Shown: piece after piece, positions 2,743-47,200 of the stretch | Layout of the letters: every line of letters begins with the position of its first letter | Position numbering within the stretch: the first letter of the stretch is position 1 | IMG/VR virus record: IMGVR_UViG_3300027759_004177 | Location: 248,001-312,000 of that record | Strand: one strand, 5' to 3' | DNA: 64,000 nt | Notes under the pieces: generated by a model | The model's input: the letters and a program-made list of their open reading frames with translations, nothing else | The model's database searches: none | Told to the model about the DNA's origin: nothing | Made by a program: the position numbers and the translations under genes

Positions 2743-5505
2743 TTAGTTGCGACCAACTGCTATTTCTATAACTGCTTTGGTAGCACTTGGGAAATCACAC
2801 AAGGCTTTGCCAATCACTTGTCCTATCAGTGGATTTTCACTGGCTTTGGCATAACCAAATCCGGCACTGACCATCAAATCTCCCTTGCAAACTGGACCAA
2901 TTACATTACAAGGAACACGTCCTTGTAGTGCCACTGGAACTACGTTTGTACCGGTTAGGCCGCCATTCATCAAGTGTGCTGGGTTTGTACTTACTACACC
3001 GGCCACTGCTCGTGTTTCTACATCGGCTTGGGTAACTTCTGCGGCTCCACCAAACATGACCACAGTACCGGGAGCATAGGCTTTGTCTGCTTGATAGTTT
3101 TCTGCCAAGTCAGCGTATTTGGCCTGTGTTGACACACCATAGAATGTACTCCACCAACTGCTTACACTACCTAAATTGTATGTCAAGTTGGCTGTGGGCA
3201 CAATACTTCCTGTGATGGTCATTTCGCCGCCAACATACAATTTGCCACCAATACCAACGCCACCTGCTACAATCAATGCACCACTTGTGGTACTGGTTGA
3301 TACTGTACTGTTGGCCAGCATCAATGAACCAGCATACAAGTTACCTGCTGTTGATCCGGCAAAGTTGGCTGTTATATTTGGTTTGGTGGTTAATCCGTCA
3401 AAGACACGCACTGACTTTGTTATGCTGTCTCTAACAACACCAAAATACTTGGTTGTACCACTGACGTATTGTCCAACAATACCAATGTCTTGACTGTCGC
3501 CGGGGTTGGCATTGGCCAAGAAGCTGATTGGATTTTCAATGACCAGGGTGCTTGTACTTGTTGTTGATCCGGTGCCGCCAATTGTGATATTACCTTGCAA
3601 GTTAAAATTACCACCCACATACAAGTTGCCTTGCAGTCCAACACCACCGTTGACCCGTAGAGCACCTGTTGTGGTGCTGGTTGCTGTGGTAGCAATGTTG
3701 ACTTCCACACCGGCTGGACGACCTGCACGACTTTGTCCAACAATTCGCATACGCTCGTTGCCGGCCACAAAACCGTCGGTAGCAAACACAATGTCGTTGG
3801 TTTGGCCATATTCGCTGGTGGCGATGACCAATTCTCCGTCACCTGTGGTTCCTGCCGGAGCACTCATAAACAAGTAACCGTCATCGGCGCCGGTGATACC
3901 AAACGCAGCGGTATTAAATGTTTCTGACGTGATACCCATGTCTATCCAACCTGACTCATTGTCACCGTTGGAAGCGTAGGCAATGATGTCAGTTGAAGCA
4001 TCGGCACCCGAGTTGAAGTTTTTAATAGCCACTTGAACAAAGTCATCAGCGTTGCCGGTCAACACAGTTGACGCATTGGTTAGTCCTGAATTGGGTTGAT
4101 ATATTACTCTACCACTGGGTTGACTTGTAGCAGTTGTTCCTGATGTACCACGTGTGATTCCAGTGAACTGTGTTGACGTTTTGCTGGTGTAGTACATGAG
4201 TTCTGTGCCAGCATACAAGGCGCCGTGTACCAAGAATCCTGCGGTACTGTTTACAGTAAGTGTGGTTGCTGTGGTGTTGGCTGTGCTACTTATTGTGGCT
4301 GTAACGTTGGCGTCAACGATTAAGGCCTTGGCACCTGCGCCTTGATAAATGGCACCATTTTGTGATACCAAGTTACCTGTGACATTTAATCCGTCGCCGT
4401 TGATGAATCGTCCTTGTATTGCACCAGTGGCAAATCCACCTGCGGAGAACACAATGTCGCCACGAGCGCCATCAGCTGTGGCAAGGACTAAGTTACCACC
4501 AGTTGGGGTAGTGTTGGCGTAGGCAGGAGCACTTAGAAAAATATATCCGTCACCGGCCTTGGTCACAGCAAATGCAGGATCTGTAAAGGTGGTACTGCAA
4601 ACACCCATGTCAATGAAGCCGTTGTCATTGTCTGAACGATCGGCATAGGCAATAAAGTCTGTGCTGGCACTGATACCAGAATTACGATTGTGCAGGGCCA
4701 CTTGAGCAAATGAGTTGATATTGCCGGTAAACAAGGCAGCCGGATCTGTGATTGCTGCAACTGCTTCAAATTCTTTAGCCAAGGGTCCTTGGTAAATGGT
4801 TCCGCCATTGGCCACCAAGTTACCTGTGATATATAAACCGTCATCCTTTTTAAAACGACCTTGTTCTGTACTTGCACCAGCGGAGAATCCGTTGGCCGCA
4901 AACACAATATCGCCAAATACACCATCGGCTGTGGCTAAAACTAAGTTACCACCTGTAGGTGTGGAGTTGGCATAAATTGGCGCACTTAAAAAGATATATC
5001 CGTCGCCGGCCTTGGTCACTGCGTAAGTAGGATCACTAAACAGGCTACTGGCAATACCCATGTCAATGAAACCACCGGTATTGGTTCCTCTATCAGAATA
5101 GGCAATGAAATCGCTTGATGCACTGGTTCCCGAACTGCGGTTGGTCAATGCACTTTGAACAAATGCGTTGGCTGATTTGGCACCAATACCAATGGTATCT
5201 GTTAAGGCACCACTGGTTACAAATGCATCTGCTGTGTTGTCTGGACTAAAACTCAAATTACCACGCAGGCTGGTCAAAGCACCAGTCATTGTGTGTTCTA
5301 TGCCGTTGTCAATTTTGAATGTGATATTACTACCAGATCCAGTGTCTGTGATTGTGATTGACGAATCATTTTTGGCAATTTGGCTTACACCAACGTTACC
5401 AGTGATGTTTACGTCACCTGATGTGTTGATTGATCCTGTTGTTGCATCAATCGTTAGCGGTCCTACTGTAAGACCGTTGCGTACTACAAAGTTTCCGTTT
5501 GCCAT
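2743..5505 (-). CDS. Fibre/spike protein with three internal repeats and probable C-terminal intramolecular chaperone domain
   Basis: 920 aa; three copies of DFIAY...GFIDMG...DGYIFLSAP...LVLAT.DG..GDIVF; C-terminal YADLAENY...AGVVST.PA..MN...VALQGRVP...KGDL...IGKAL (Peptidase_G2/IMC-like). Confidence 0.65.
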   Translation of the reverse strand: MANGNFVVRNGLTVGPLTIDATTGSINTSGDVNITGNVGVSQIAKNDSSITITDTGSGSNITFKIDNGIEHTMTGALTSLRGNLSFSPDNTADAFVTSGALTDTIGIGAKSANAFVQSALTNRSSGTSASSDFIAYSDRGTNTGGFIDMGIASSLFSDPTYAVTKAGDGYIFLSAPIYANSTPTGGNLVLATADGVFGDIVFAANGFSAGASTEQGRFKKDDGLYITGNLVANGGTIYQGPLAKEFEAVAAITDPAALFTGNINSFAQVALHNRNSGISASTDFIAYADRSDNDNGFIDMGVCSTTFTDPAFAVTKAGDGYIFLSAPAYANTTPTGGNLVLATADGARGDIVFSAGGFATGAIQGRFINGDGLNVTGNLVSQNGAIYQGAGAKALIVDANVTATISSTANTTATTLTVNSTAGFLVHGALYAGTELMYYTSKTSTQFTGITRGTSGTTATSQPSGRVIYQPNSGLTNASTVLTGNADDFVQVAIKNFNSGADASTDIIAYASNGDNESGWIDMGITSETFNTAAFGITGADDGYLFMSAPAGTTGDGELVIATSEYGQTNDIVFATDGFVAGNERMRIVGQSRAGRPAGVEVNIATTATSTTTGALRVNGGVGLQGNLYVGGNFNLQGNITIGGTGSTTSTSTLVIENPISFLANANPGDSQDIGIVGQYVSGTTKYFGVVRDSITKSVRVFDGLTTKPNITANFAGSTAGNLYAGSLMLANSTVSTSTTSGALIVAGGVGIGGKLYVGGEMTITGSIVPTANLTYNLGSVSSWWSTFYGVSTQAKYADLAENYQADKAYAPGTVVMFGGAAEVTQADVETRAVAGVVSTNPAHLMNGGLTGTNVVPVALQGRVPCNVIGPVCKGDLMVSAGFGYAKASENPLIGQVIGKALCDFPSATKAVIEIAVGRN

Positions 5506-20025: not shown

Positions 20026-20120
20026 AAGAACTCCTTATATAAATGGCTTGTATATTATTTACAAATATACGCAGTTTTTGGGGTTAAATGGGTAGTTTTT
20101 GAAGAATATTGACGGAATAA

Positions 20121-20354
20121 TTACATTCCGAGAGGGGCGCCACCAGGTTCTGCAGGAGGTTGGTACTGTTTTGCCACTGCTTCCAGCTTTTTCTCGTGCT
20201 CAAGTTTACGTACATCATGAGCTTGTCTTAGCTGGTTTAGGTGTGATAGAGTCAAGCGAGTTTTACGGCTATCAGACATTTTAAGCGTACTTTGATCCGC
20301 TTTTTCATCGTGGTAGCCGTGCGGTGCTGGATCAAATAGTTCGCTAATAATCAT
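20121..20354 (-). CDS. Small head-module hypothetical protein
   Basis: 77 aa; TTAAATA 5 nt upstream of the ATG; lies between portal and core genes. Confidence 0.6.
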   Translation of the reverse strand: MIISELFDPAPHGYHDEKADQSTLKMSDSRKTRLTLSHLNQLRQAHDVRKLEHEKKLEAVAKQYQPPAEPGGAPLGM

Positions 20355-20377
20355 AATACTATTTAACCTTTTATGTG

Positions 20378-24586: not shown

Positions 24587-25438
24587 ATGGAAAATGCTAT
24601 TCAAAACCCCCTAGTCAAGTACTTTAGACAGCCGTCAATCTACTTAAAATTGCCATCAAACGGTCAATATTGGAAAGAAGGGGCAGTAAATTTACCAGTA
24701 ACTGGGGAAATTCCTGTGTACCCAATGACTGCCAGGGACGAAGTTACTTTGCGTACTCCTGATGCACTCATGAACGGAGCTGGCGTTGTTGACGTAATAC
24801 ACAGTTGTTGCCCCAATATCACAGATGCTTGGAGTATGCCCAGCGTGGATGTGGATGCTGTGTTGATCGCTATCAGGATTGCCAGTTACGGTGCAGAAAT
24901 GCCAGTTGATACCAGTTGCCCCAATTGCGGTGCAGAAAACACCCACAATGTCGATTTGAGTGTGAGACTATCGGGAATCACTTGTCCAGACTACAACAAA
25001 AAAATCAGTTTACCCGATGAGTTGCATGTAAAATGCACGCCGCAGGCATATTTCAGTGTTAATAGAAAAAATACCATATCGTTTGAAGAACAACGGCTAG
25101 TACAGGCCCTAGAACAAACTGATGAAAACTCAGAACAACGCATGTCACAAATTGCCGACAGCATGACCCGATTGATACAGATCAGCATAGACACAGTAAC
25201 AGACAGCACCGAGTACATTGAAATGCCCGACGGAACCCGTGTTACAGATAAAGAATTTATCAAAGAGTTTTATAGCAATGCTAATGGCAGCGTTGTACGT
25301 AACGTACAAGAACAACTGGCTGAAATCAACAACCAAGGCGCCGTCAAGGATCAATCAGCTGAGTGCAACGAGTGTAAAACTGAATATAAAATTCCTATCA
25401 TGTTTGACTACGCAAATTTTTTCGCAATCGGCTCCTGA
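24587..25438 (+). CDS. Baseplate hub/tail assembly chaperone (T4 gp26-like)
   Basis: YLKLPSNG..., PMTARDE..L, D.DAVLIAIRIASYG, two CxxC pairs (CPNC, CNEC), C-terminal NFF. Confidence 0.7.
   Translation: MENAIQNPLVKYFRQPSIYLKLPSNGQYWKEGAVNLPVTGEIPVYPMTARDEVTLRTPDALMNGAGVVDVIHSCCPNITDAWSMPSVDVDAVLIAIRIASYGAEMPVDTSCPNCGAENTHNVDLSVRLSGITCPDYNKKISLPDELHVKCTPQAYFSVNRKNTISFEEQRLVQALEQTDENSEQRMSQIADSMTRLIQISIDTVTDSTEYIEMPDGTRVTDKEFIKEFYSNANGSVVRNVQEQLAEINNQGAVKDQSAECNECKTEYKIPIMFDYANFFAIGS
25414..25423 (+). promoter_or_regulatory. Putative -1 ribosomal frameshift slippery site (A AAT TTT TTC)
   Basis: Overlapping X XXY YYZ heptamers in frame near the stop; the -1 frame opens after TGA at 25405-25407 and runs to 25653. 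Confidence 0.65.
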
Positions 25439-25653
25439 CATTAGACAATGACGCCGTCGTAAAACTGTTGGAATCTTACGATAAAGAGTCGAGAGCCGTT
25501 AAAAAAGAAGCGTTGCAAATGGCCTGGTACATGCGAGGTGGGTTGACCTATAACGATGCTATGGCACTGAGCTCATCAGAACGAGAGATAATTGGTGAAA
25601 TAATTAAAAAGAACATGGAAACTACAGAGAAATCGGGATTACCATTCTTCTAA
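25417..25653 (+). CDS. gp51-like chaperone extension, probably translated by -1 frameshift from the upstream gene
   Basis: Track ORF 25468-25653 has only a TTG start and no SD; frame is open back to 25408; WYMRGG.TY..AM.LS..ER motif. Confidence 0.6.
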   Translation, partial: FFRNRLLTLDNDAVVKLLESYDKESRAVKKEALQMAWYMRGGLTYNDAMALSSSEREIIGEIIKKNMETTEKSGLPFF

Positions 25654-25661
25654 CTGATTTA

Positions 25662-25712
25662 AGATTAGCTACGCTAATCTATTGATTTCGCTTTGCTCAT
25701 CAATGTTTTTCT
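25662..25712 (+). terminator. Twin hairpins plus T-tract (terminator for + transcript; possibly ssDNA hairpins)
   Basis: AGATTAGC-TAC-GCTAATCT and ATTGAT...ATCAAT followed by GTTTTTCTT. Confidence 0.5.
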
Positions 25713-25719
25713 TCTTTGT

Positions 25720-26123
25720 TGCTTTTCCGTATTATCCAGATTAATTGGTCACAATTCACCGTATGCACGGTGAACATGATTGAGCATTATCCGAGTAGCA
25801 CAGTCATTTATTATAAAGAGATTGTATTTACATACGCAGAGGCGGTTGACCGGTACCCCTTACTCTAGCTTCACATATCAACGGAACCCTAGTGACCCGA
25901 TAATAAATCCAAGTCCTATAAGCTGGGGTTGTATCTTTTTCACATAGCCCCGACCATTTTTTGCCTTAAGTTAGCATTTGCCTTGCACACCCGAGCAACA
26001 TCTAGACTGGGTATCTCACCAGTCCGCAACGGGAGTCGAGCTGCCTCGACCAAACAGAGTGCGAATTCCATAATAAGAGTATAACTTTGTGTTTATTGCA
26101 GAATGACTTTGAGTCGAGTGTGC
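25720..26123 (-). ncRNA. Candidate large structured ncRNA downstream of the GIY-YIG gene
   Basis: ORF-free 470-nt gap with many stems; most wobble pairs and a GUAA tetraloop favour the minus strand; two candidate pseudoknots. Confidence 0.6.
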
Positions 26124-26551
26124 TAAATCTTGTTGATAATGTGTGAGCCATGTACACGGACTTGTATGTGTCCGTTATAATAATCGTTACTTTCTAAAAC
26201 TCTGCGAGCAAATTGTTCTCTTGCTTCTATATAGCTGCATTCAGATTTACTTTTGCAGTAGTATAGTATTTCTCTACTGAAATTGTCAACACCCAATGCA
26301 ATCACATCTTTTGTTAATTCTGGACTGGAACCATAGTATGTTTGCCAGTCTGAATCAATTTTACCACGAATCTTCTTGCGTTTCTTCTTACCATTTTTTA
26401 GTTTGACCATTCGGTAAGTGGTCTTGCTAAATTTTGCAAGTTTTTTGCCAATATACTTTCGGCCGGTTAGGTTATTTGTTATCAAATAAACAAAACCAAC
26501 ACAATCTTCGGGTAGCGTTTCTACTTGAGTATTTTCGTGAATCCATGACAT
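26123..26551 (-). CDS. Short stand-alone GIY-YIG (Seg-like) endonuclease
   Basis: GFVYLITNNLTGRKYIGKK, W..YYGSS, F.REIL, E.REQF, YYN; K/R-rich insert KLKNGKKKRKKIRGK. Confidence 0.88.
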   Translation of the reverse strand: MSWIHENTQVETLPEDCVGFVYLITNNLTGRKYIGKKLAKFSKTTYRMVKLKNGKKKRKKIRGKIDSDWQTYYGSSPELTKDVIALGVDNFSREILYYCKSKSECSYIEAREQFARRVLESNDYYNGHIQVRVHGSHIINKI

Positions 26552-26597
26552 GCATAGTAGTTATGATCTTTGCCCTGCAATATATACTAATCTTGAA

Positions 26598-28367
26598 TTA
26601 AACAATGTCTACGTCAGTGTTATAACTGGTGTACCCGTTTTCTTTTACCACGTGAAGTGTGTTATTAACACGGCCTGCCAGTTCATCCTTGTGCGACACT
26701 AACCAAATACTCTTGTTAGCTTCGCGACTCATCTTTTTCAGGATAGCCAAAGAGTTTTCAACTCCCGAACTATCCATACCGCTGTCTACCAACTCGTCAA
26801 TAAACAACAAGTTGATGGGTTGATATAAACTTTCCCAAACATCGCGGAAGCTCCAGCTCAAGGATAAAATCAAGCGATTGCGTTCTCCGCGACTTAGATT
26901 GTCAAAGTCTAAATCTCTACCCAACTCTGTAATGGCTACAGTCAAGTCGTTGTTGAACTTGACTGTGTGTGGTAAGCCAATACGGTCCAGGTATTGTCCC
27001 AAGCGGGCATTTAAATAACTTAAATTCTGATCAATAATACGTTTACGAATAAATGAATCTTTGTTGGTCAGCAGTTTGAGTAAGAACTCTTGATGTTCTC
27101 TAATGTTATTGAGTTCGTTAATCACATCAAAACTGACTTCTTCTACGCCTTGTGTTTGCATTTCTGCTATTTGTTCAGCATACGGATCTTGTTCAACTGC
27201 CTTGATTTCCAACTGTTGAATCAAGTTATCAACGCTTGCTTGATGATGAATAGCATCCGACTCTTTGTCATAAAACGTTTCAGGCCGTGGTCCTAGCTTG
27301 CCCAGCCCATCGTGAGCTGACTGTAATTCACCCAGAGTGGCAGCAAAGGCATCCGCTGCTTCCTTTGCTCCAGCCAAGTCTCTCTGCTTTTGTCCCAGTA
27401 CTGATTGGTGCTTCTCGTCATGGAAATCCTGTCCACAGGTATGGCACGTATGATTTTCCAACGAAACAAGTTCTGCTGATATCTTGCCAATCGTTTTTTC
27501 CTCACGGGAAAGGTCCAGTTTTGTGCGACCAATCGCCGACGATAGTTCATTGATATCCTTGCGAGTTTGATCCCATGTCTTGAACGCTTGGTGTGCCCGA
27601 ATCTCGGCCTGGATGTCAATTCTCTGAAGCTCTTCAATTCCTGTCTGTAATTTCTGTATATCTTCTGCATGTTTATTCACCCATAGCGTTTGCCTACGCT
27701 TCAACGCTTCGATCTGTTCTTCAATTCGCTTGTTGGCATCGCCCACAGCCTTGATACGAAACTCTTCTTGTGTGATGGCATCTTTGGTTACTTTGCCAGC
27801 TTCCTTTAGTTTGTCTGCTTTTTCACTTAGCAATGTAATACCAAGTAATTGCTCAATTATAGTACGCTGGTCATTGGCTTTGAGTGCTAAGAATGGTTCT
27901 GTGTAGGTGTTGAGAGCCACAATGTGCTTGAACATGTCGTGACTCATGCCCAGCATACGTTCTATTTCTTGCTGTGTTTCTCGGCTGTCGCCTTGTGCAT
28001 CATCGGTGATTTCTTGTTCGCTATCGCCAACAAAAAACTTCATGGTGTTGGGTTTACGTCCGCGTTCTATTCGGTAGCTGACACCTTCTTTTTCAAAATC
28101 AATTGTGACCATCATGTTTTTAGCATTGGTCTTGTTGATCAAGTTGTCTTTTTTAATGTTGGTAAGTGCGTTGCCGTACAGGGCATAGCTCAATGCATTG
28201 ATAATAGTGGTTTTACCTGTACCGTTACGTGCACCGGAGTCGTCTCCGCCTAGGTCTAAATTTTCACCCAACACAAGAGTCAAGTCTTGTCGATCAAAAT
28301 TAACTGCCTGTGTGGTATTGCCCACACTCATAAAGTTTTTAACAGTAAGGTCTTTTATTTTAAACAT
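26598..28367 (-). CDS. gp46: Recombination endonuclease ATPase subunit (gp46, Rad50/SbcC-like)
   Basis: KNFMSVGN, Walker A NGTGKTT, Zn-hook CHTC, signature LSRGE, Walker B FIDE..D, H-loop VSH. Confidence 0.95.
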   Translation of the reverse strand: MFKIKDLTVKNFMSVGNTTQAVNFDRQDLTLVLGENLDLGGDDSGARNGTGKTTIINALSYALYGNALTNIKKDNLINKTNAKNMMVTIDFEKEGVSYRIERGRKPNTMKFFVGDSEQEITDDAQGDSRETQQEIERMLGMSHDMFKHIVALNTYTEPFLALKANDQRTIIEQLLGITLLSEKADKLKEAGKVTKDAITQEEFRIKAVGDANKRIEEQIEALKRRQTLWVNKHAEDIQKLQTGIEELQRIDIQAEIRAHQAFKTWDQTRKDINELSSAIGRTKLDLSREEKTIGKISAELVSLENHTCHTCGQDFHDEKHQSVLGQKQRDLAGAKEAADAFAATLGELQSAHDGLGKLGPRPETFYDKESDAIHHQASVDNLIQQLEIKAVEQDPYAEQIAEMQTQGVEEVSFDVINELNNIREHQEFLLKLLTNKDSFIRKRIIDQNLSYLNARLGQYLDRIGLPHTVKFNNDLTVAITELGRDLDFDNLSRGERNRLILSLSWSFRDVWESLYQPINLLFIDELVDSGMDSSGVENSLAILKKMSREANKSIWLVSHKDELAGRVNNTLHVVKENGYTSYNTDVDIV

Positions 28368-28375
28368 AGGTTCTT

Positions 28376-28404
28376 ATTATATACTAAAATCTTGATCTAG
28401 CCAA
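28376..28404 (-). promoter_or_regulatory. Sigma70-type promoter for gp46
   Basis: TTGGCT-17 nt-TATAAT, 8 nt before the ATG. Confidence 0.5.
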
Positions 28405-29666
28405 GCAAAATGAGCTCGCCAGTTGGTATTGCGTCTTTGATCCAGAGTTGTCAGATATGTTTTTAATTTATTAATTTGACTGACATTATTTTTAGATGCT
28501 AAACTTGTGGTAGCAATACCTTGCATGGCCTTACGCTGTGCTTGCTGTGTGGGAGTAGTATCGGGCATCAACTTCAATATCTGGTCAAAGTCGTTGGCAA
28601 ACACAGCACCATCGAACAAATATGGATTATCAAATTCTCCGGACGTATTAAAACTGTGAATGATGGGTTCTGCTGCCCATTCCCGTTGGAACCATGTGGC
28701 TGTGGCTGTTTGTTTGGTATTCCAGTGATTGATACGTTCCAATAACTTGGGCAACGATTTAATAGTCAAGGCTGATACAGCACTATTAATGCTTAAGGAT
28801 ATCCATGGCTGATTCAACAGCAATTCAAAGTTACGTTGCCATTGTGCTAGGTCGAGTCCATAGCGAACATATTCCTGCTCACTGTCCCAACAATCTAAAC
28901 TGGCAGTGATTTGCAGTTTCCATATTTTGTTTGACAGCACCAATTTTCTAAATTGCTGTAAGTATTGTTCAAATCGTGGCGTGGGTATGTTTAGATTGGT
29001 TACTATACTAAAAATTAAATCAGGATTAGCATGAGTTCGCCAAAACTCAATGCTGTCGTCTAGTTCACTCATTAAAAACGGCTCACCACCTAAAATATGA
29101 TACCGCTTGATTGTTTTGTAACAATCGTTTTCGTCCAAGTATTGCCACAGGCCTGCAACCATTTGATCATAATGGTCATTGTGTTGTGCTTGTTTGATGT
29201 CAAACGTTCGGGTGTGAAACGAATCTCCAAACTTTCTATTTTCTTCTTCCCATAGGCTACTATGGTGTGGCCCACAGTATACGCATTTCATATTACAGGT
29301 ATTTTTAAAATAAACTTCCAGTATGGTAGGAGTAACAGTTGTAGATGATTCATCTGTGTCAAGCTCGGGCGGCACCAACCATCCGTTATCTTGTTGTAGT
29401 GTGCTTTGTCTATCACTTAGGCCACCTGCATCTTCTACGTTTCGACAGTATTCGCAACCAGCCCCCGGCCACGCACCTGCAAGCATGGTCTGTCTAGCTG
29501 AAATTTTTTCAGGTAAATTATGAAATGATGCAAAGTTGTCGGCTGGTATGGCATATTTTTCCGTGCGGTGACAGCTGGCACTAGTACCACTGTTAAAGTA
29601 GACGGTGCTCCATGCCCATTTTAATAAACAAGCAGATTCTGTGCGTATGGGAAACACTTTATTCAT
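28377..29666 (-). CDS. Radical SAM enzyme with N-terminal auxiliary Fe-S (SPASM/twitch-like) domain
   Basis: CNMKCVYC (CxxxCxxC), LGGEPF, TN, ASLD; N-terminal C..KW....SCH...CEYC. Confidence 0.9.
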   Translation of the reverse strand: MNKVFPIRTESACLLKWAWSTVYFNSGTSASCHRTEKYAIPADNFASFHNLPEKISARQTMLAGAWPGAGCEYCRNVEDAGGLSDRQSTLQQDNGWLVPPELDTDESSTTVTPTILEVYFKNTCNMKCVYCGPHHSSLWEEENRKFGDSFHTRTFDIKQAQHNDHYDQMVAGLWQYLDENDCYKTIKRYHILGGEPFLMSELDDSIEFWRTHANPDLIFSIVTNLNIPTPRFEQYLQQFRKLVLSNKIWKLQITASLDCWDSEQEYVRYGLDLAQWQRNFELLLNQPWISLSINSAVSALTIKSLPKLLERINHWNTKQTATATWFQREWAAEPIIHSFNTSGEFDNPYLFDGAVFANDFDQILKLMPDTTPTQQAQRKAMQGIATTSLASKNNVSQINKLKTYLTTLDQRRNTNWRAHFAWLDQDFSI

Positions 29667-41100: not shown

Positions 41101-41294
41101 CATTGACACCTAACATATCAAGTGTGTTGATTGTGCCAGCAAGTAATAATTTGGTGTTTGGTAACTACTTCCAAATCAACGCCGAACCATGGGAAATTAT
41201 TACCAGTGCCGCCACAGTCAATGATGTTGAAATAATTTCAGCTATCACAGCCGCTCAATTGAATTTGGGCAATACATTAGTCGGAACATATTAA
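38118..41294 (+). CDS. gp6: Baseplate wedge subunit gp6-like (baseplate J family)
   Basis: DFETLR..M..YL, DF.ESSE..ALID..A, ENFIDTAQRR.S...LA..L.Y.P, V.FGDG.F..IP.G, IK..AP..YYTQNRM.T.EDY; late promoter GATAAATA 38090-38097. Confidence 0.85.
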   Translation: MAQTTRQTNLLVQQDWTKIYQTFTNADFTSYDFETLRNSMITYLKTYYPETFNDFLESSEYLALIDMIAFLGQSLAFRADLNARENFIDTAQRRDSILKLARMLSYNPQRNTGASGLLKFESVRTTEFLTDSSGINLSNATIHWNDLTNENWLEQFTTILNAALVSSQAVGKPGNSQYLNNIKTDEYTINLNTNTLPVAPFTTTIQGSSVAFEAVSATSLGQSYLYERDPTSSGAFNVLYRNDNNGNGSNNTGFFLYFKQGKLNSTEFNITNAIPNNFVTVATNNINNTDAWLYSLDVNRNVSEKWTKVPALNGINVIYNQLTEKNLYQINTRTNDQVDVVFGDGSFSNIPQGSFRFYYRTGNGITYSITPDDMASVSVAFSYISKQNRVETLTITASLNYTVTNANAAPSLSSIKASAPQQYYTQNRMITAEDYNIFPQTNYGSIQKIKAVNRTSSGVSLYLDALDPTGSFSSTNIFGDDGTISANNKIGSTQFDFLTDNDIYSAVYNVIIPTINSTEVRNYYYGNTSVFPRFSGNTNTVSGGNIKFNQNTVSTGTSTGFLANLVSNVTLQVGANVSHYLRYVDTGAVLQFSAPTGYRFNSEHQLQLGNTLTNAGDTLNFYAVVTDIVADSDPTVPNRITLGTVVPSGAILSNVSLAGAEAIVPAYKNDLSTSLITTIITQIKALLNFGLKYNTTVRVQYEDGSYGPYGVWENITPANIGSSTDWILKFTYNQGLYTINYRNLEYTFASAGNTKFYFDPSVRVYNSVIGTNVKDTIKILKINTKPNATATLDNDIVWQIYNTITATDGYVDKTKVLVQVPTTQAEAIPDNPDLYLQVAAGSADRDSLYFQYRHNVPGRSRINPTPVNIVDVYVLTSTYAIDYANYLKDLTGTIAEPELPTSTSLETAYSDLDNYKAVSDTLIYNPAKFKPLFGAKADVSLRARFQVVKNPAANVTDNEIKSQVITAVNKYFDVSNWDFGETFYFSELAAYLHSTLTPNISSVLIVPASNNLVFGNYFQINAEPWEIITSAATVNDVEIISAITAAQLNLGNTLVGTY

Positions 41295-44200
41295 TGGCCA
41301 TAGTCAACACAATTAATTTTTTACCAAGGATATTCCGTACACCAACCAATCAACGATTCCTTGGTGCCACCATGGACCACTTAACGTCCGACGCAATCAA
41401 CACACCTGTCAACGGATACATAGGTCGAACATTTGCTCCTACCTACAAACCAGGAGACAATTATGTACCTGAATCAACCGATCTACGAAAAAACTATCAA
41501 TTGGAACCCAGTGCTGTAGTAACTGACAGCAACGGTGAAATAACATTTAACACTGGTTACATTGATCTATTACAAAACATAAAAAATTATGGCGGCCTAA
41601 CAGACAATCAGCAACGCTTGTTTGGTAGCGAAATGTACAGCTGGGACGGACATTTTGATTACGATAAATTTGTAAACTATTACAATTATTATTGGTTACC
41701 CGATGGGCCAGACTTTGTGCCAATTTATGGAAATCAAGCGCCTTATACTGCTGATTACACAGTAGTGCGAAACGGTGCCGTTGGTGGATACACATTTACC
41801 GGCAAGGGATATCAGCCCAATACTCAACTGACTTTGGTTCGTGGCGGAGTCTACACATTTACTATCAATCAACCCGGTCATGACTTTTGGATACAACGTA
41901 GCCCCGGTGTCAACGGCATTGATCCCAATATTCCCACGGTAAGTACCCGAGATGTATACGGTGTTACCAACAATGGCGCCAGCACTGGCACAGTAACTTT
42001 CCGTGTACCTCTGTACAACGCACAAGATTTTTATATCTTGATGCCAATCAAGTCCAGCGTTGATGCGGCAACCACACTCAAATACATCGACATACAAAAT
42101 CGTTTATTAAGTAATTTCCTAAACCAGTACCCAGATGGTATTGATGGTATTAATAATCAGCTACAAAACAAAACTTTAATATTCATTGGCAACGACGAGG
42201 ACGATACCAATTGGACCACCCCTGCAGTCAGCCCAGCATACACCAGCTTAGATGTGGCCAGCATCCGTCCCGGAGACATTATCAATGATGCCACTCGAGT
42301 TAAAACTTGGAAAATTAATTTGGTTGCTGTTGATAGTGCTGCTACAGATTTTATTATACAACTATCCCCGGAAACCACAATTCTAGCAAGAGAAAAAGTT
42401 TTTATAAGCTCAGGTAAAACCTATGCTTCACAAAAGTTTTGGCTCAACGATAATCTAGCATACAATGTAGAACCAGCAATTACCGCAAACACAGATCGCC
42501 TATACTATCAAGACAGTAGCAATCCGGGGTTTGTTGGCGAAATACGCATAATAAACAACACGTCAGACACAATCGAAGTTGACACAGAAATTGTTGGTCG
42601 GGTTGGATATACCAGTCCCAATGGTGTGGTGTTTACCAATGGATTAAAGATTCAATTTGACAGTTTAGTCACTCCAGCGTCATACTATAAATTTGAGTAT
42701 GTCAATTACTCAACTTGGCTAACAGCACTCAATGACATGGGTGCTACAGTAACTGGTACCAGTGGCGGTGCAGTGGCGTATAAAGATGAGCAATTGGTTG
42801 GTGAGTGGAACGGAACCACCGGATATAGAATTAGAGAATGGTATGTAGAAGGCGTGGGCACAGCAATTAATTTAGTGCCTGTTGGACAAACAACAGTACC
42901 TGAGGCCTACGGATATCTACTGGATACTACTCCGGACTATATCACAATCAATCGTGGCAGCCGAGATAGAAATCCCTGGGCACGTAGCAATCGTTGGTTC
43001 CACAAAGATGTGATTGCCGCCACCGCTGACTACAATAACACCACTGAAAATTACGGACTCAACTTGCCTGGTCGCAGACCTATCATTGAGTTTGACTCAG
43101 ACCTACAACTTTTTAATTTTGGCCGTCAAGCAAAAAATAGTGTAGATCTAGTGACTTTTGAGGAAACAGATGCATTTGGTATAACTATACCGGCTACTCG
43201 AGTTGAAGGACAAATCACTGCTGTAGTGGATGGTATTACTTTGGCGCCCGGCCACAGAGTTGTATTTGCCAATGACTATGATCTCAATGTTAAAAATAAA
43301 ATATGGGAGGTAACTGTAATTGAAGGACTGGGTGGACAAAATTACATCAACTTGATCGCCACCGATGACAATCCAGTGCTGGCTGGAGAAAATGTTTTGG
43401 TCACCGAAGGCGACAACGCAGGAAAAACTTATTATTTTGATGGTGAAGATTGGTTTGTATCACAATCTAAATCCAGCATAAATCAGATGCCTTTGTTTGA
43501 TCTAGTAGATGCCGACGGATATAGTTTCAGTGACACAACTGTTTATCCAGGATCTACTTTTGCGGGCAACAAGATTTTTAACTACAATGTTGGTACTGGA
43601 AACAACGATACAATCTTGGGATTTCCTTTAAGCTATCAAAATTTCAACAACATCGGTGACATTGTATTTAAAAGTCACTATAATACAGATTCGTTTACTT
43701 ACACATCAGATACCAATACCGGAGCAACTCAAGCCATTGCTTGTAGCACAGGTTATTTAATTAAAAACACCAATTTAACCACACAAGAAAAATTAAATTC
43801 CTGGGTACCGGGTGCTGAAGACAGTAGCCAATATCAGTTGTTTACCAAATTCTTTGATGGGCGAGTGCTTGACATCAATGGAGTCAACAGAGCATTCGTA
43901 CAAGTTGACGTTTTGCCCGCAACAACAGATACTATACCGCACCTCAAAGTCTATAAAAATAATATGCTGTTAACAGCAACAGTTGACTATGAGTTAACCA
44001 CATATGGTATGTACAATATCGTAATCTTTTTATCTGATCCAGCCGTGGGAGACAAACTTGATGTTGCAATTTTTAGCGACACAGCAAGTAAACTGGCACC
44101 ATATGAAGTTCCAAAAAATCTGATTCAAAATCCTCTCAACGAGAATTTTTCAACCATTGCTTTGGGGCAAATTAGAACACACTACAATAAACTGTTAGAA

Positions 44201-47200
44201 AACACATCAGTCAGCAACAGACCTATCCAGGACACGTACTTAAAACAGCAAAACGGAACACTGAATCAACACTCTGCGCCGTTGGTCTATGCAATGACAT
44301 TCTTAAACGATCCAATGCTTAATTTTGTCAATGGTATTGATTTGGCCAAAAAAGAATATAGCAGATTTAAAAATAAATTTATAAGTTTGTGCTCAACCCT
44401 ATCTGGTCTAAACTACAATGACCCTGTTACAGGTGTAGATACAATACTACAAAATATCAACTCGGTTAAAAATTCTAGCTTTCCTTGGTACTATTCAGAC
44501 ATGGTGCCACAAGGCGGAAATTACACAACAATAACTTACACCGTATTAAATGAGCGTCAGACCAACTATGAAATTGGCAATATTTTTAATCCCGTTGAAT
44601 TAAGCAATCGTGCTGTGTTAATCTGGCACAATGGCGTACAGCTGACCTTGGGCAAGGATTATGAATTTAGTCCCACAGTACCAGCAGTAATTTTTTCAAT
44701 CTCATTTGCGATCAACGACACCATTGTCATCAGAGATTACTTTGACACAGACGGAAGTTTTGTTCCCGAAACTCCAAGTAAACTAGGTCTGTATCCCAAA
44801 TCAGAGCCTTTGATTTATCAAGATACAACATATCAGACTCCTGTAAATGTGATTAGAGGACACGACGGATCGGTAATGCCAGCATTTGGCGACTTCCGCG
44901 ACAACTACATACTGGAACTTGAAAAGCGTATCTACAACAACATCAAGGCAGACTATACCAAAAATATTATCAATTTATATGATATTGTTCCTGGACGCTT
45001 TAGAACAACCGAGTACACACGAGATGAGTTCGTACAAATTCTATCTCGCAACTTTTTACAATGGTCCGGTACAAACAATGTGGACTATACCACCAACAGT
45101 TGGTATGATGCCAACAATTCCTGGACCTGGAACTATGAAAAGTTTACAGACACAGTAGATGACAAACCCTTGCAAGGCAGTTGGAGAGCAATTTATAACT
45201 ATTGGTATGATACCGATCAACCCAATAGAGCACCATGGGAAATGTTGGGATTTGGATTTGAACCTGCATGGTGGGAGACTCGGTATGGTCCAGCACCGTA
45301 TACTCGAGGTAACTTTACTCTTTGGGAAGATTTAGAAGCTGGTTATGTTTGGAACAACGGAGACCCCTACACTGACACTCGTTTTGCCCGTCCGGGGCTG
45401 ACTGACTTTATTCCTGTAGACAGCGCCGGAAATTTATTACCACCAACTGACATCAACATAGTCAAACAATATAACCTAACTGCCGGCGGCAACAATTATG
45501 TCATTGGACAAGAAGGTCCTGTAGAAACAGCGTGGATACGCAGCAGTGACTATCCGTTTGCCGTACAAATGGCCATAGCCATGGCCAAACCTGCCAGTTA
45601 TTTTGGAACACAGTATGATACATCGAGATTCTATGTCAGCGAAATCACGGGTCAATTTAGTAGTGCCACCAATGAAAAAATTAACCCTGCCGATTTAAAA
45701 ATCAACGGAGACACACGCACTGGGGCTGTCCAACGCACCAGTGGATACATTAACTGGATTGCTGATGTTATTAAAAACGTTGGCATAGATCCAGTTGAAA
45801 AAATTTCCAGTTATTTAGAAAATTTAAGTGTTAAGCTAAATTACAAAGTTGGCGGATTCACTGACAAAAATATTCTAACAGTCACAGCAGAACAAACTAC
45901 CCCAGGTGCCAAACGTGCTGGAGTTATCATACCTGACAGCAATTATAATGTATATCTGAATAAATCAATACCTGTGTCTGTAGTTACCTATAGTGCAGTA
46001 ATAGTGCAACGTACCAATGTTGGATATAGCGTGGTCGGATACAATACCAATGATCCATTCTTTACAATTTTGCCCAGTGTCGCTAATAACAAAGCAGAGA
46101 CAATCACGGTGGGCGATGTCAGCGCCAAACTGTATCAAGACACCACAAATCGCACAATATCAGTGCCATATGGTACAACCTACAGTAACATACAACAATT
46201 AAGTGACTTCTTGATCAGTTATGAACGATATCTCGAAAGTGTTGGATTTGTATTTGATCAATTTGACAAAGATTTGCAAGAAGTAAAAAACTTCAGGACC
46301 AGTGTCAAAGAATTTTTATACTGGAGTCAACAGGGCTGGGAAGTAGGTACCATACTGGTGCTAAATCCAACAACAGATCGACTGCTATTAAAAACATCCG
46401 GCACAGTGGTAGACGAAATAACCAATACACTAAACTCAGGACGCATATTGGATCAAAATTTCTTGCCTATCAAGAGTGGAAATTTTAACATTGTAAGAAC
46501 TGAAAATTTTGCATTTGGCAACCAATTTGGTATAACCACACTCAACGGAACAGGTATATGTTTTGCCAGTCTAAATCTGGTTCAATTTGAACATGTGTTG
46601 GTATTTGACAACGAAAGTGACTTTGGTGACATTATCTATGTGCCATCGCAAGGAGTAAGACAGTATCGATTAAGTTTGTCAGGAGCCAAGACCGGAGCCT
46701 GGACCGGCGCATTAAGTGCCAGTGGATACATGTACAATACTACAAATGTCAGTGGATGGACTGCTGGCACAGACTATCAAGTAGGCGACATTGTTACTTT
46801 TAATAATAACTATTATACTGCACTTGATTCTATACCAGCAACTACAAAATTCAATGTGGCAGACTGGGCACAAATTCAAGAATCTGATTTAAAAACTGGA
46901 CTATTACCAAGCCTTGGTCTGTTAGCACAACAGTCAGAAAACATTTATAACGTTGATCGACCACCAGACAACGAAACATTGCAGTTATTCAGTGCAGGCT
47001 TAATTGGATTCCGTCCAAGAGACTATTTAACTGATTTGGGCATTGGTACCGCAACACAAACAAAATTCTACCAGGGTCTTATCAAAGAAAAAGGCACATT
47101 AAATTCTATCACTGCCTTGACCAAGGGTAACTTTGACAACGTATCAGGTAACATCGCAATTTTTGAAGAGTGGGGATTCAAAGTTGGCGACTACGGCGAC

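What the first reader, a model, noticed from the sequence alone, without database searches (positions are those of the whole stretch)
25720..26564. Candidate large double-pseudoknot ncRNA coupled to a minimal GIY-YIG nuclease
The 470-nt ORF-free gap, the longest in the window, begins at the nuclease stop codon and is densely paired on the minus strand. Stems: GCACACUCGA (26123-26114) with UCGGGUGUGC (25994-25985), enclosing GUCGAG/CUCGAC and GACUGG/CCAGUC hairpins; GGGG..UGU-GAAAAAGAU-ACA.CCCC; UAGGACUUG/CGGGUCACUA; AGGGG..CGG-UCAA-CCG-CCUCU; GUAU-GUAA-AUAC (GNRA loop); GAGUA/UACUC; UUCACCGU-GCAU-ACGGUGAA flanked by two GGAUAAU direct repeats. Loop AUUUAUUAU (25908-25900) is perfectly complementary to AUAAUAAAU (25814-25806), and loop AAAAAGAU pairs, with one mismatch, with the adjacent AUCUCUUU (25822-25815), giving two side-by-side pseudoknots. 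I do not recognise tRNA, tmRNA, RNase P or group I/II intron cores. The 142-aa nuclease lacks the usual DNA-binding tail but has a K/R-rich arm. Inference: a nuclease-RNA complex (possibly RNA-targeted nicking), a new ribozyme-like RNA, or an RNA-primed origin.
Basis: partly seen in the sequence, partly recalled or inferred. Interest (0 to 1): 0.88.

Follow-up and report, generated by a model that had tools for sequence, protein, structure and literature searches.

The report
New pseudoknotted phage RNA beside nuclease
The ORF-free gap encodes a real, roughly 400-nt, intricately folded non-coding RNA shared by more than 100 uncultured freshwater jumbo-phage contigs and absent from Rfam, but nothing found here indicates that it works together with the small GIY-YIG nuclease gene next to it.

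Summary
Window 26062→25662 (minus strand) is a structured non-coding RNA. On 99 distinct homologues, 96.8% of cells pair and 52 of 84 pairs show compensatory changes (0 of 500 shuffles reach this).

Not supported: the outer stem (26123-26114), GAGUA/UACUC and pseudoknot 2. AUCUCUUU instead forms a covarying helix with AGAG (25866-25863).

New features:
- a 5-6 bp loop-loop kiss (25882-25877 × 25850-25845), kept through about six different complementary sequences;
- two conserved 3' hairpins;
- two 7-nt boxes (GGAUAAU) that change in concert, identical in 97 of 99 RNAs across 10 variants. This is unexplained.

Rfam has no match in the window. In relatives the orphan motif Polynucleobacter-1 (RF01718) replaces the 5' domain upstream of the same core. 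That motif was already reported downstream of this gene family in 2010.

Nuclease coupling is weak:
- an unrelated PDDEXK nuclease takes the GIY-YIG gene's place in five loci;
- other ORFs are inserted between gene and RNA in 21 loci;
- nuclease homologues in the four cultured phages examined lack the RNA;
- there is no special coevolution between protein and RNA.

Best reading: a stand-alone, operon-terminal phage RNA of unknown function that acts in trans.

The parts
26123..26551 (-). 142-aa GIY-YIG nuclease gene (the family often mis-named 'NAD synthetase'; T4-GC213 / PSSM2_218 family)
   Evidence: Pfam PF19835 SegE_GIY-YIG, E=2e-32, covering the whole profile. PHROG 447. The AF2 model's best PDB match is the I-TevI catalytic domain 1LN0, probability 0.97. 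39% identical to PSSM2_218, E=8e-18.
26063..26122 (-). Variable leader between the stop codon and the RNA body.
   Evidence: Seen only in the window and three relatives; in most type-A loci the model match starts within about 10 nt of the stop codon.
25985..26062 (-). 5' domain: H1 (26062-26059 / 25988-25985), hairpin Pa (26051-26045 / 26040-26034), H2 (26033-26030 / 25993-25990), hairpin Pb (26025-26019 / 26010-26004)
   Evidence: Compensatory changes in 4/4, 6/7, 4/4 and 6/6 pairs (helices 1-5).
25961..25977 (-). Hairpin Pc with a nearly invariant 9-nt loop UAACUUAAG
   Evidence: 4/4 pairs show compensatory changes (helix 6).
25925..25951 (-). Hairpin Pd (GGGG..UG / CA.CCCC) with the conserved loop GAAAAAGAUA
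Evidence: helices 7-8.
25890..25918 (-). Hairpin Pe. Its loop, 25908-25901, is the 5' strand of pseudoknot PK1.
   Evidence: helix 9 (7 of 10 pairs with compensatory changes) and helices 10-11.
25806..25813 (-). 3' strand of pseudoknot PK1 (UAAUAAAU)
   Evidence: Top-ranked helix in the structure-free scan, 6/6 pairs with compensatory changes; 7 of 8 pairs. Relatives keep it with different sequences: UUAGCG/CGCUAA, CUAGUAU/AUACUAG, UCACG/CGUGA, CUGAU/AUCAG.
25867..25889 (-). Hairpin Pf. Its loop GUUGAU (25882-25877) kisses the Ph loop.
   Evidence: The stem is invariant (helices 12-13). For the kiss.
25838..25860 (-). Hairpin Ph (AGGGG UAC CG-GUCAAC-CG CCUCU). GUCAAC (25850-25845) is the kissing partner.
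   Evidence: Five core pairs are kept in 124 of 126 distinct core segments, through GUUGA/UCAAC, GUUGU/ACAAC, GUCGU/ACGAC, GUCAU/AUGAC, GUCAG/CUGAC and GUUGUG/CACAAC.
25817..25866 (-). Helix Pg' (AGAG 25866-25863 with CUCU 25820-25817). It closes a three-way junction with Ph and Pi.
   Evidence: Pair 252-386 is U-A in 50 and A-U in 48 of 99 sequences. Relatives have CAAC/GUUG and GAGC/GCUC.
25824..25835 (-). Hairpin Pi with a GNRA tetraloop (GUAU-GUAA-AUAC)
   Evidence: 4/4 pairs show compensatory changes (helix 18). Absent or replaced in the relatives that carry Polynucleobacter-1.
25786..25806 (-). Repeat unit 1: UGAC (25806-25803) ... ACUC + box R1 GGAUAAU (25792-25786)
   Evidence: R1 equals R2 in 97 of 99 RNAs, across 10 different 7-mers.
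25754..25775 (-). Hairpin Pj (GUUCACCG UGCAUA CGGUGAAU)
   Evidence: helix 19. Relatives have UUUGCCC/GGGCAAA and CGGAACCG/CGGUUCCG.
25731..25751 (-). Repeat unit 2: UGAC (25751-25748) ... AUCU + box R2 GGAUAAU (25737-25731)
   Evidence: The spacing from R1 to R2 is 49-60 nt.
25681..25704 (-). Hairpin S1 (AUUGAU-GA-GC AAA GC-GAA-AUCAAU) with a conserved purine-rich internal loop
   Evidence: 8 of 8 pairs show compensatory changes across all three RNA types.
25662..25680 (-). Terminal hairpin T (AGAUUAGC GUA GCUAAUCU), probably the 3' end and a terminator shared with the convergent genes
   Evidence: 5 of 7 pairs show compensatory changes. The scan calls it terminator-like on the + strand.

Best explanation
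Window 26062 to about 25662 (minus strand) is a stand-alone gene for a structured RNA of about 400 nt. It belongs to uncultured freshwater jumbo myoviruses that are distant T4 relatives.

Shown:
- The RNA is always the last element of the leftward operon, just before the convergent genes. It usually starts within about 10 nt of the stop codon of whatever gene lies upstream.
- It folds into a 5' junction domain (H1/Pa/H2/Pb) and two hairpins (Pc, Pd).
- A compact core follows: hairpins Pf, Ph and Pi around the junction helix Pg'. The core is locked by an H-type pseudoknot (Pe loop x 25813-25806) and by a 5-6 bp kiss between the Pf and Ph loops.
- The 3' platform consists of two identical, apparently unpaired 7-nt boxes, each preceded by YGAC, on either side of hairpin Pj. 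Then come hairpin S1 and a terminal hairpin.

Inferred:
- The RNA is made by read-through of the operon, because no conserved promoter lies upstream, and may then be cut out.
- It acts in trans as an RNA-protein scaffold or decoy. The rigid body would present the two identical boxes to two copies of one partner, either a protein dimer or a complementary nucleic acid.
- The GIY-YIG gene is a neighbour in the same operon, not a subunit. It may be one of several small free-standing endonuclease genes that settle beside a very conserved RNA gene, as T4 segB sits among tRNA genes (recalled from the literature, not checked here).
For: Structure. 96.8% of cells pair and 52 of 84 pairs have compensatory changes. 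Sliding the partners gives only 15-18 such pairs, and 0 of 500 shuffles reach the observed values. PK1 and the kiss were not part of the covariance model, so their support does not come from fitting the alignment to the model.

Non-coding.

Single copy in the window.

Distribution: 72 of 80 GIY-YIG loci gave a model match. Seven of the other eight carry a third RNA type with the same 3' module, and one is truncated.

Position at the operon's end, facing convergent genes.

No conserved internal promoter: the sigma-70-like site at 26289-26260 has TTGACA in only 3 of 57 distinct genes.

Independence from the nuclease: a PDDEXK_15 nuclease replaces it; 1-2 kb of inserted sequence separates gene and RNA in 21 loci; the 5' domain is swapped between close relatives; there is no special protein-RNA coevolution; nuclease homologues occur without the RNA.

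Concerted boxes.
Against: - No expression data, so transcript ends and stability are inferred.
- No partner for the boxes was found. There is no complementary site inside the RNA, within 2.5 kb, or enriched in the flanks held.
- Within this clade every GIY-YIG locus that has downstream sequence carries an RNA with the same 3' module. A functional link therefore cannot be excluded.
- The gene is near-universal here (93% of RNA loci) and well conserved, which is not typical of a selfish homing gene.
- The terminal hairpin has only a weak U-tract on the RNA strand.
Confidence: 0.5

Rival explanations
1. Nuclease-RNA complex. The RNA is a cofactor or guide of the 142-aa GIY-YIG protein. The concerted 7-nt boxes or a variable segment would set the target specificity.
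For: - The gene and an RNA with the same 3' module are adjacent or nearly so in 100 of 108 RNA loci and in all 79 usable GIY-YIG loci.
- The protein has no C-terminal DNA-binding domain but has a long Lys/Arg-rich beta-hairpin.
- The same gene-RNA adjacency was noted for Polynucleobacter-1 in 2010.
- Boxes that change in concert look like a specificity element.
Against: - An unrelated PDDEXK nuclease takes the gene's place in five loci.
- 1-2 kb of inserted sequence separates gene and RNA in 21 loci.
- RNA 5' domains are swapped between phages whose proteins are 94% identical.
- Box columns rank only 9th to 22nd of 92 RNA columns for association with protein residues.
- Homologues in Melnitz, Bellamy, phiN3 and P-SSM2 have no such RNA.
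Confidence: 0.1
2. Homing-target reading of the adjacency, compatible with the best explanation. The small GIY-YIG and PDDEXK genes are free-standing homing-type endonucleases. They lodge beside the RNA gene because its invariant stretches make good recognition sites, and breaks nearby drive the observed swapping of the neighbouring RNA domain.
For: - Two unrelated nuclease families occupy the same slot.
- The mosaic lies exactly at the junction between gene and RNA: three different 5' RNA modules sit on one 3' module and do not follow the nuclease's relatedness.
- The genes upstream of the nuclease vary.
- The RNA has a run of about 55 nearly invariant bases, 25895-25838.
- In cyanophage Bellamy the homologue precedes a tRNA cluster.
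- The best fold match is the I-TevI catalytic domain.
Against: - The gene is near-universal rather than sporadic in this clade and widespread in cyanophages.
- It has no recognisable DNA-binding domain.
- No nuclease-free 'empty site' was found among the loci held.
Confidence: 0.3
3. A cis-acting element at the 3' end of the mRNA. The fold would protect or process the operon's transcript, or insulate it from the converging late transcription, with no role in trans.
For: - Always the last element of the operon, facing convergent genes.
- Starts at the upstream stop codon, with no conserved promoter of its own.
- Ends in conserved hairpins S1 and T.
Against: A 3' end needs only a hairpin. About 400 nt with a pseudoknot, a kissing complex, a GNRA hairpin and invariant loops is far more than that, and the upstream genes it would serve differ from locus to locus.
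Confidence: 0.15
4. A ribozyme or self-processing RNA. The two identical boxes would mark repeated cleavage or ligation sites that release or circularise the 49-60-nt segment carrying hairpin Pj.
For: - The tertiary architecture is in the range seen for ribozymes.
- Identical boxes bracket a small hairpin unit.
Against: - No match to any ribozyme family in Rfam, even at E up to 10.
- No locus was seen with a single box.
- No catalytic core is recognisable.
Confidence: 0.07
5. A DNA-level element such as a replication origin or packaging site. The two YGAC-N-box units would be iteron-like binding sites for a phage protein, flanking an inverted repeat.
For: - Iterons are known to evolve in concert with their binding protein, which would explain R1 = R2.
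- The site lies between the recombination and structural gene modules.
Against: - The inverted repeat between the boxes covaries as an RNA helix instead of keeping its sequence.
- G-U pairs are specific to one strand.
- Only two repeat units are present.
- The boxes differ between very close relatives, with no partner protein in view.
Confidence: 0.07

Closest known systems
Polynucleobacter-1 RNA motif (Rfam RF01718; Weinberg et al. 2010, PMC2864571)
   Same: - Same genomic niche. The 2010 supplement states that most examples lie downstream of gene family GOS11034, with possible homology to PSSM2_218. PSSM2_218 is 39% identical to the window's GIY-YIG protein.
- In L001, L012 and L044 the motif (94-120 bits) sits between the GIY-YIG gene and the same pseudoknot/kissing core and 3' module as in the window.
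   Different: - The window does not match RF01718 at the gathering score or at E up to 10. Its 5' domain (H1/Pa/H2/Pb, Pc, Pd) has a different layout.
- In L044 the Rfam match covers only the first ~135 nt of the RNA region that continues into the shared core; the core, the boxes, S1 and T lie outside it.
Large 'ornate' orphan RNAs of phages and prophages (GOLLD, ROOL)
   Same: Big, highly structured non-coding RNAs carried by phages, with many covarying helices, pseudoknots and no known function. That they are phage-borne and form multimers is recalled from the literature; only the abstract of bioRxiv 2024.12.08.627333, listed, was seen here.
   Different: Smaller (about 400 nt, against roughly 600-800 nt as recalled from the literature), no sequence or model match, and a different context. 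Multimerisation was not tested.
phi29 packaging RNA (pRNA)
   Same: A phage RNA whose two loops carry covarying complementary sequences. In pRNA these pair between molecules to build a ring (from memory).
   Different: Covariation cannot tell whether the Pf x Ph kiss forms within one molecule or between two. The phage is a T4-type myovirus with gp20-like portal and T4-type baseplate genes, and such phages are not known to need a packaging RNA. No sequence similarity.
Guide RNAs of transposon-borne nucleases (OMEGA RNAs of IscB/TnpB)
   Same: A structured RNA encoded directly beside a small nuclease gene.
   Different: The nuclease here is GIY-YIG, not RuvC/HNH. No hypervariable guide sits next to a fixed scaffold. 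Another nuclease family can take the gene's place, or ORFs can separate it from the RNA. No coevolution.
T4 SegB and the T4 tRNA / stable-RNA cluster
   Same: A free-standing GIY-YIG endonuclease gene set among conserved stable-RNA genes (from memory). Cyanophage Bellamy's homologue of the window protein precedes a tRNA cluster.
   Different: The window protein has no C-terminal DNA-binding domain and is nearly universal in its clade. Homing was not tested.

Membership tests
Rfam RF01718 Polynucleobacter-1 | Covariance-model score at or above the gathering score (37 bits) | tested here: not met
   No hit in the window at gathering or at E up to 10 over 25400-26700. Met in relatives L001, L012 and L044 at 94-120 bits.
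Rfam RF01718 Polynucleobacter-1 | Location downstream of the GOS11034 / PSSM2_218-like gene | tested here: met
   Supplement text. PSSM2_218 against the window protein: 39% identity, E=8e-18.
The new RNA family defined here (model R1, type A) | Full-length match to the covariance model, plus PK1 and the Pf x Ph kiss | tested here: met
   Window 25721-26069(-), 371 bits. The window contributed to building the model. PK1 and the kiss are present.
Group I / group II introns | Match to the intron core models and flanking exons of an interrupted gene | tested here: not met
   No Rfam match at E up to 10. gp46 and the GIY-YIG gene are intact, and no minus-strand ORF follows the RNA.
tRNA / tmRNA / RNase P RNA | Detection by ARAGORN or the Rfam models | tested here: not met
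RNA-guided nuclease systems (OMEGA-like) | Obligate pairing of one nuclease family with the RNA | tested here: not met
   PDDEXK_15 replaces GIY-YIG in five loci. 1-2 kb of inserted sequence in 21 loci. Homologues occur without the RNA.
RNA-guided nuclease systems (OMEGA-like) | A variable guide segment whose targets can be identified | tested here: inconclusive
   The 7-nt boxes vary, but no complementary target was found in the RNA, the flanks or the window. Whole genomes of relatives were not available.
GIY-YIG nuclease superfamily | The GIY-YIG domain with its conserved Tyr/Gly motifs, Arg, Glu and Asn | tested here: met
   PF19835, E=2e-32, profile positions 1-123 of 123. Y22, Y33, G35, R31, E109/E112 and N126 are invariant in 26 homologues; assigning them to the catalytic positions is my reading. 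Fold match to the I-TevI catalytic domain.
Seg-type free-standing homing endonucleases | A C-terminal DNA-binding domain | tested here: not met
   142 aa in all. Residues 120-142 are modelled with pLDDT below 50, and no second Pfam domain is found.
Seg-type free-standing homing endonucleases | Sporadic distribution among close relatives, and cleavage of the site in genomes that lack the gene | tested here: inconclusive
   Present in 93% of RNA loci. The slot is shared with a PDDEXK nuclease, and the neighbouring DNA is mosaic. Cleavage cannot be tested here.
T4 endonuclease II (DenA) | Sequence or fold similarity to the solved T4 EndoII structure | tested here: not met
   phmmer against PDB sequences found no nuclease at E up to 1. 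The 50 Foldseek matches listed show I-TevI first and no EndoII.

The most novel reading that the evidence does not exclude
The two 7-nt boxes that are kept identical within each RNA yet differ between close relatives are a programmable specificity element. On this reading the folded RNA is an adaptor that pairs twice with a nucleic-acid target. It could guide the neighbouring nuclease or another effector, or it could act as a template whose repeats let a copied strand re-align. Either would be a new kind of phage RNA-directed system.
Probability: 0.1. Interest if true: 0.9.

Novelty: new variant of a known kind. Interest (0 to 1): 0.62.

Why it matters
- It adds a well-supported RNA of about 400 nt, with a double tertiary lock, to the short list of large orphan phage RNAs.
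- It shows that the Rfam motif Polynucleobacter-1 is only the exchangeable 5' part of a longer modular RNA.
- It places that RNA in uncultured freshwater jumbo phages.
- It raises a sharp, testable puzzle: two boxes held identical through ten sequence variants.
- It removes an attractive but unsupported claim of an RNA-guided GIY-YIG nuclease.

Tried and rejected
- Single-sequence folding: not significant on either strand.
- Rfam at gathering and at E up to 10, and ARAGORN: nothing in the window.
- blastn of the locus against GenBank phages: no match.
- Protein-coding reading: rejected.
- A hammerhead-like reading of UGAUGA..GAAA in hairpin S1: rejected, because only UGAGC..GCGAA is conserved and the rest covaries as a stem.
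- A mini-ORF or stop-codon reading of the boxes, and an endless ORF from rolling-circle copying: rejected. Linker lengths vary and the R1-R2 spacing is 49-60 nt, not a multiple of 3 (mini-ORF frames checked by eye).
- A partner complementary to the boxes: none inside the RNA (best mean 5.5 of 7 pairs), none at a fixed offset within 2.5 kb, none enriched in the flanks held, nothing telling in the window.
- Coevolution between the boxes and the GIY-YIG protein: at background level.
- A promoter inside the GIY-YIG gene: not conserved.
- T4 EndoII identity: no similarity by sequence or fold search.
- Bacterial genomes: the 17-mer scan gave mostly chance hits. Among the 100 of 120 loci searched with the model, three were real, at least two of them contigs of metagenome-assembled genomes (Haliscomenobacter, Flavobacteriales), most likely binned phage DNA.
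- The 2023 catalogue of candidate viral RNAs: its supplementary files are not held, so overlap could not be checked.
Full report
**Context.** The window comes from a large T4-type myovirus.
- The finding lies between a leftward block and a rightward block. The leftward block holds a Metallophos-domain protein (gp47-like in my reading), a radical-SAM protein, a gp46/SbcC-like ATPase at 26598-28367 and a 142-aa GIY-YIG gene at 26123-26551. The rightward block holds a 61-aa ORF and a T4 baseplate protein.
- The portal protein is about 50% identical to those of the jumbo phages Atu_ph07 and PA5oct.
- blastn of the locus against GenBank phages finds nothing.
- The GIY-YIG protein has thousands of close, full-length relatives in freshwater metagenomes, on contigs of up to 370 kb.

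- On the single sequence, no. Its folding energy is ordinary on both strands (z = -1.08 and -0.98).
- With homologues, yes. A search for relatives of the GIY-YIG protein returned 80 viral loci, and about 36 of them share 75-88% identical DNA over window ~26033-25677.
- A MAFFT alignment shows compensatory changes in almost every hairpin.
- I built a covariance model (R1) and collected further loci through an invariant 16-mer. Aligning them gave 99 distinct full-length RNAs (A3).
- On A3 the full structure has 96.8% of cells paired, 52 of 84 pairs with changes on both sides, and 810 such cells. No shuffle out of 500 reaches these values, and sliding the partners by 1-3 columns gives 15-18 pairs and 36-57 cells.
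- The region is non-coding: there is no 3-base periodicity and the indels are not in threes.
- Abundant conserved G-U pairs fix the strand as the window's minus strand.

- Confirmed: hairpins Pa, Pb, Pd, Pe, Ph, Pi (GNRA loop) and Pj, the two GGAUAAU repeats, and pseudoknot 1. That pseudoknot was not in the model, yet it was the best-supported helix in a scan of all column pairs. Divergent relatives keep it with quite different sequences.
- Rejected, outer stem: its 5' arm (26123-26114) is already different in L013 and L018 while its supposed partner is unchanged. That partner forms H1 and H2 with 26062-26059 and 26033-26030.
- Rejected, pseudoknot 2 and GAGUA/UACUC: neither has a single compensatory change. 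The AUCUCUUU segment supplies CUCU to helix Pg', paired with AGAG at 25866-25863. The closing pair of Pg' switches between A-U and U-A in about half of the sequences, and the whole helix becomes CAAC/GUUG or GAGC/GCUC in relatives.

**New features.**
- A loop-loop kiss between Pf (GUUGAU, 25882-25877) and Ph (GUCAAC, 25850-25845). It is invariant in type-A RNAs, but across 126 distinct core segments five pairs are kept in 124, through six or so different complementary sequences.
- Two further hairpins downstream, S1 (25704-25681, with a conserved GA/GAA internal loop) and T (25680-25662). Of their 15 pairs, 13 show compensatory changes. The RNA therefore probably runs from 26062 to about 25662.
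- The two boxes. R1 and R2 are identical in 97 of 99 RNAs although ten different 7-mers occur. The YGAC four-mer before each box also changes in both units together.
- I found no partner for the boxes inside the RNA, within 2.5 kb, or in the flanks held. The spacing between them (49-60 nt) rules out a repeated ORF. This remains unexplained.

**A modular family and the link to a known motif.** Model R1 matched downstream of the nuclease gene in 72 of the 80 GIY-YIG loci.
- About 25 matches are short and divergent. In the three tested (L001, L012, L044), Rfam's Polynucleobacter-1 (RF01718, 94-120 bits) lies directly after the nuclease gene. It is followed by the same core (Pe with PK1, the Pf x Ph kiss, Pg', Ph) and the same 3' module.
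- Seven more loci carry a third, unrelated sequence of about 400 nt with the same 3' module.
- So one conserved 3' part carries at least three exchangeable 5' parts. L001 and L007, whose nuclease is 94% identical to the window's, carry the Polynucleobacter-1 form.
- The 2010 description of that motif already says that most examples lie downstream of gene family GOS11034, possibly homologous to PSSM2_218 of cyanophage P-SSM2. PSSM2_218 is 39% identical to the window protein.
- The gene-RNA adjacency is therefore on record. The window's RNA, the shared core and the 3' module are not in Rfam.

**Is the RNA coupled to the nuclease?**
- Among 108 loci found by the RNA motif alone and having enough upstream sequence, 79 have the GIY-YIG gene directly upstream and 21 have it 1-2 kb away; unrelated ORFs lie between in the loci examined. 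Eight have none.
- Of those eight, one is a false motif hit (L195) and one is cut by the contig end (L163). In five of the other six the upstream gene is a 167-170-aa PDDEXK_15 phage nuclease, and in the sixth, L150, a 164-aa ORF of unknown function.
- The RNA always ends the operon and usually begins at the stop codon of whatever gene precedes it. The sigma-70-like site inside the GIY-YIG gene is not conserved. Co-transcription is therefore likely.
- The box columns associate with protein residues no more than other RNA columns do.
- Homologues in four cultured phages lack the RNA. In Bellamy the gene precedes a tRNA cluster.
- The protein is a GIY-YIG catalytic domain with a long Lys/Arg-rich beta-hairpin and a poorly modelled tail. 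Its best structural match is the I-TevI catalytic domain, and it shows no similarity to T4 EndoII.

**Interpretation.**
- The best-supported reading is a stand-alone structured phage RNA, probably released from the operon's 3' end and acting in trans. Its rigid, doubly locked body presents two identical boxes.
- The nuclease is a neighbour. Either it simply shares the operon, or it is one of several free-standing endonucleases that settle beside a very conserved RNA gene. The second option would also explain the mosaic at the junction.
- The mechanism of the RNA itself is inferred, not shown.
- A nuclease-RNA complex, a cis 3'-end element, a ribozyme and a DNA-level origin or packaging site remain possible, at lower probability.

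**Limits.** There are no expression data, no R-scape run and no complete genomes of relatives. A3 was fitted to the model's nested helices, although the pseudoknot and the kiss were not part of the model. The 2023 catalogue of candidate viral RNAs could not be checked.

Noticed in passing
L004:3427-3900, also L023, L038, L041, L047, L048, L071, L021, L031: A third RNA-like sequence of about 400 nt ('type B') follows the GIY-YIG gene. It has no Rfam match (tested in L004 only) and a different body, but the same 3' module: boxes ACAUGAA twice, hairpin CGGAACCG/CGGUUCCG, then S1 and T.
   Followed up: partly
L001:3476-3610, L012:3479-3620, L044:3438-3573: In L044 the Rfam Polynucleobacter-1 match covers only about the first 135 nt of the RNA region that continues into the pseudoknot/kissing core; the family could be extended.
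   Followed up: partly
L001:~3720-3790, also L010, L011: In place of the GNRA hairpin Pi, these RNAs carry an insert of tandem AUUAUAG-like repeats.
   Followed up: no
L116:5043-5549 (-), also L132, L175, L108, L147: A 167-170-aa PDDEXK_15 (PF24608) phage nuclease fills the slot between gp46 and the RNA in place of the GIY-YIG gene.
   Followed up: partly
window 25965-25973 (-): The nearly invariant 9-nt loop of Pc, UAACUUAAG, contains the palindrome CUUAAG. That could let two RNAs pair loop to loop.
   Followed up: no
window 41294-53866 (+): A single ORF of 4190 aa.
   Followed up: no
window 28377-29666 (-): A 429-aa ORF with a weak radical-SAM match (24.9 bits, below the Pfam cut-off of 29.5) lies between the gp47-like and gp46-like genes. 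Similar genes sit upstream of the nuclease in several relatives.
   Followed up: no
window 20026-20377: The second-longest stretch without a plausible gene (352 nt), between the portal gene and the next gene. No Rfam match at gathering.
   Followed up: no
L267 (Haliscomenobacter sp. MAG contig, 148 kb), L234 (Flavobacteriales MAG), L286: The real matches among the bacterial-genome loci searched include two contigs of metagenome-assembled Bacteroidota genomes (L286's origin was not looked up). They may be binned phage DNA and a weak hint at the host.
   Followed up: no
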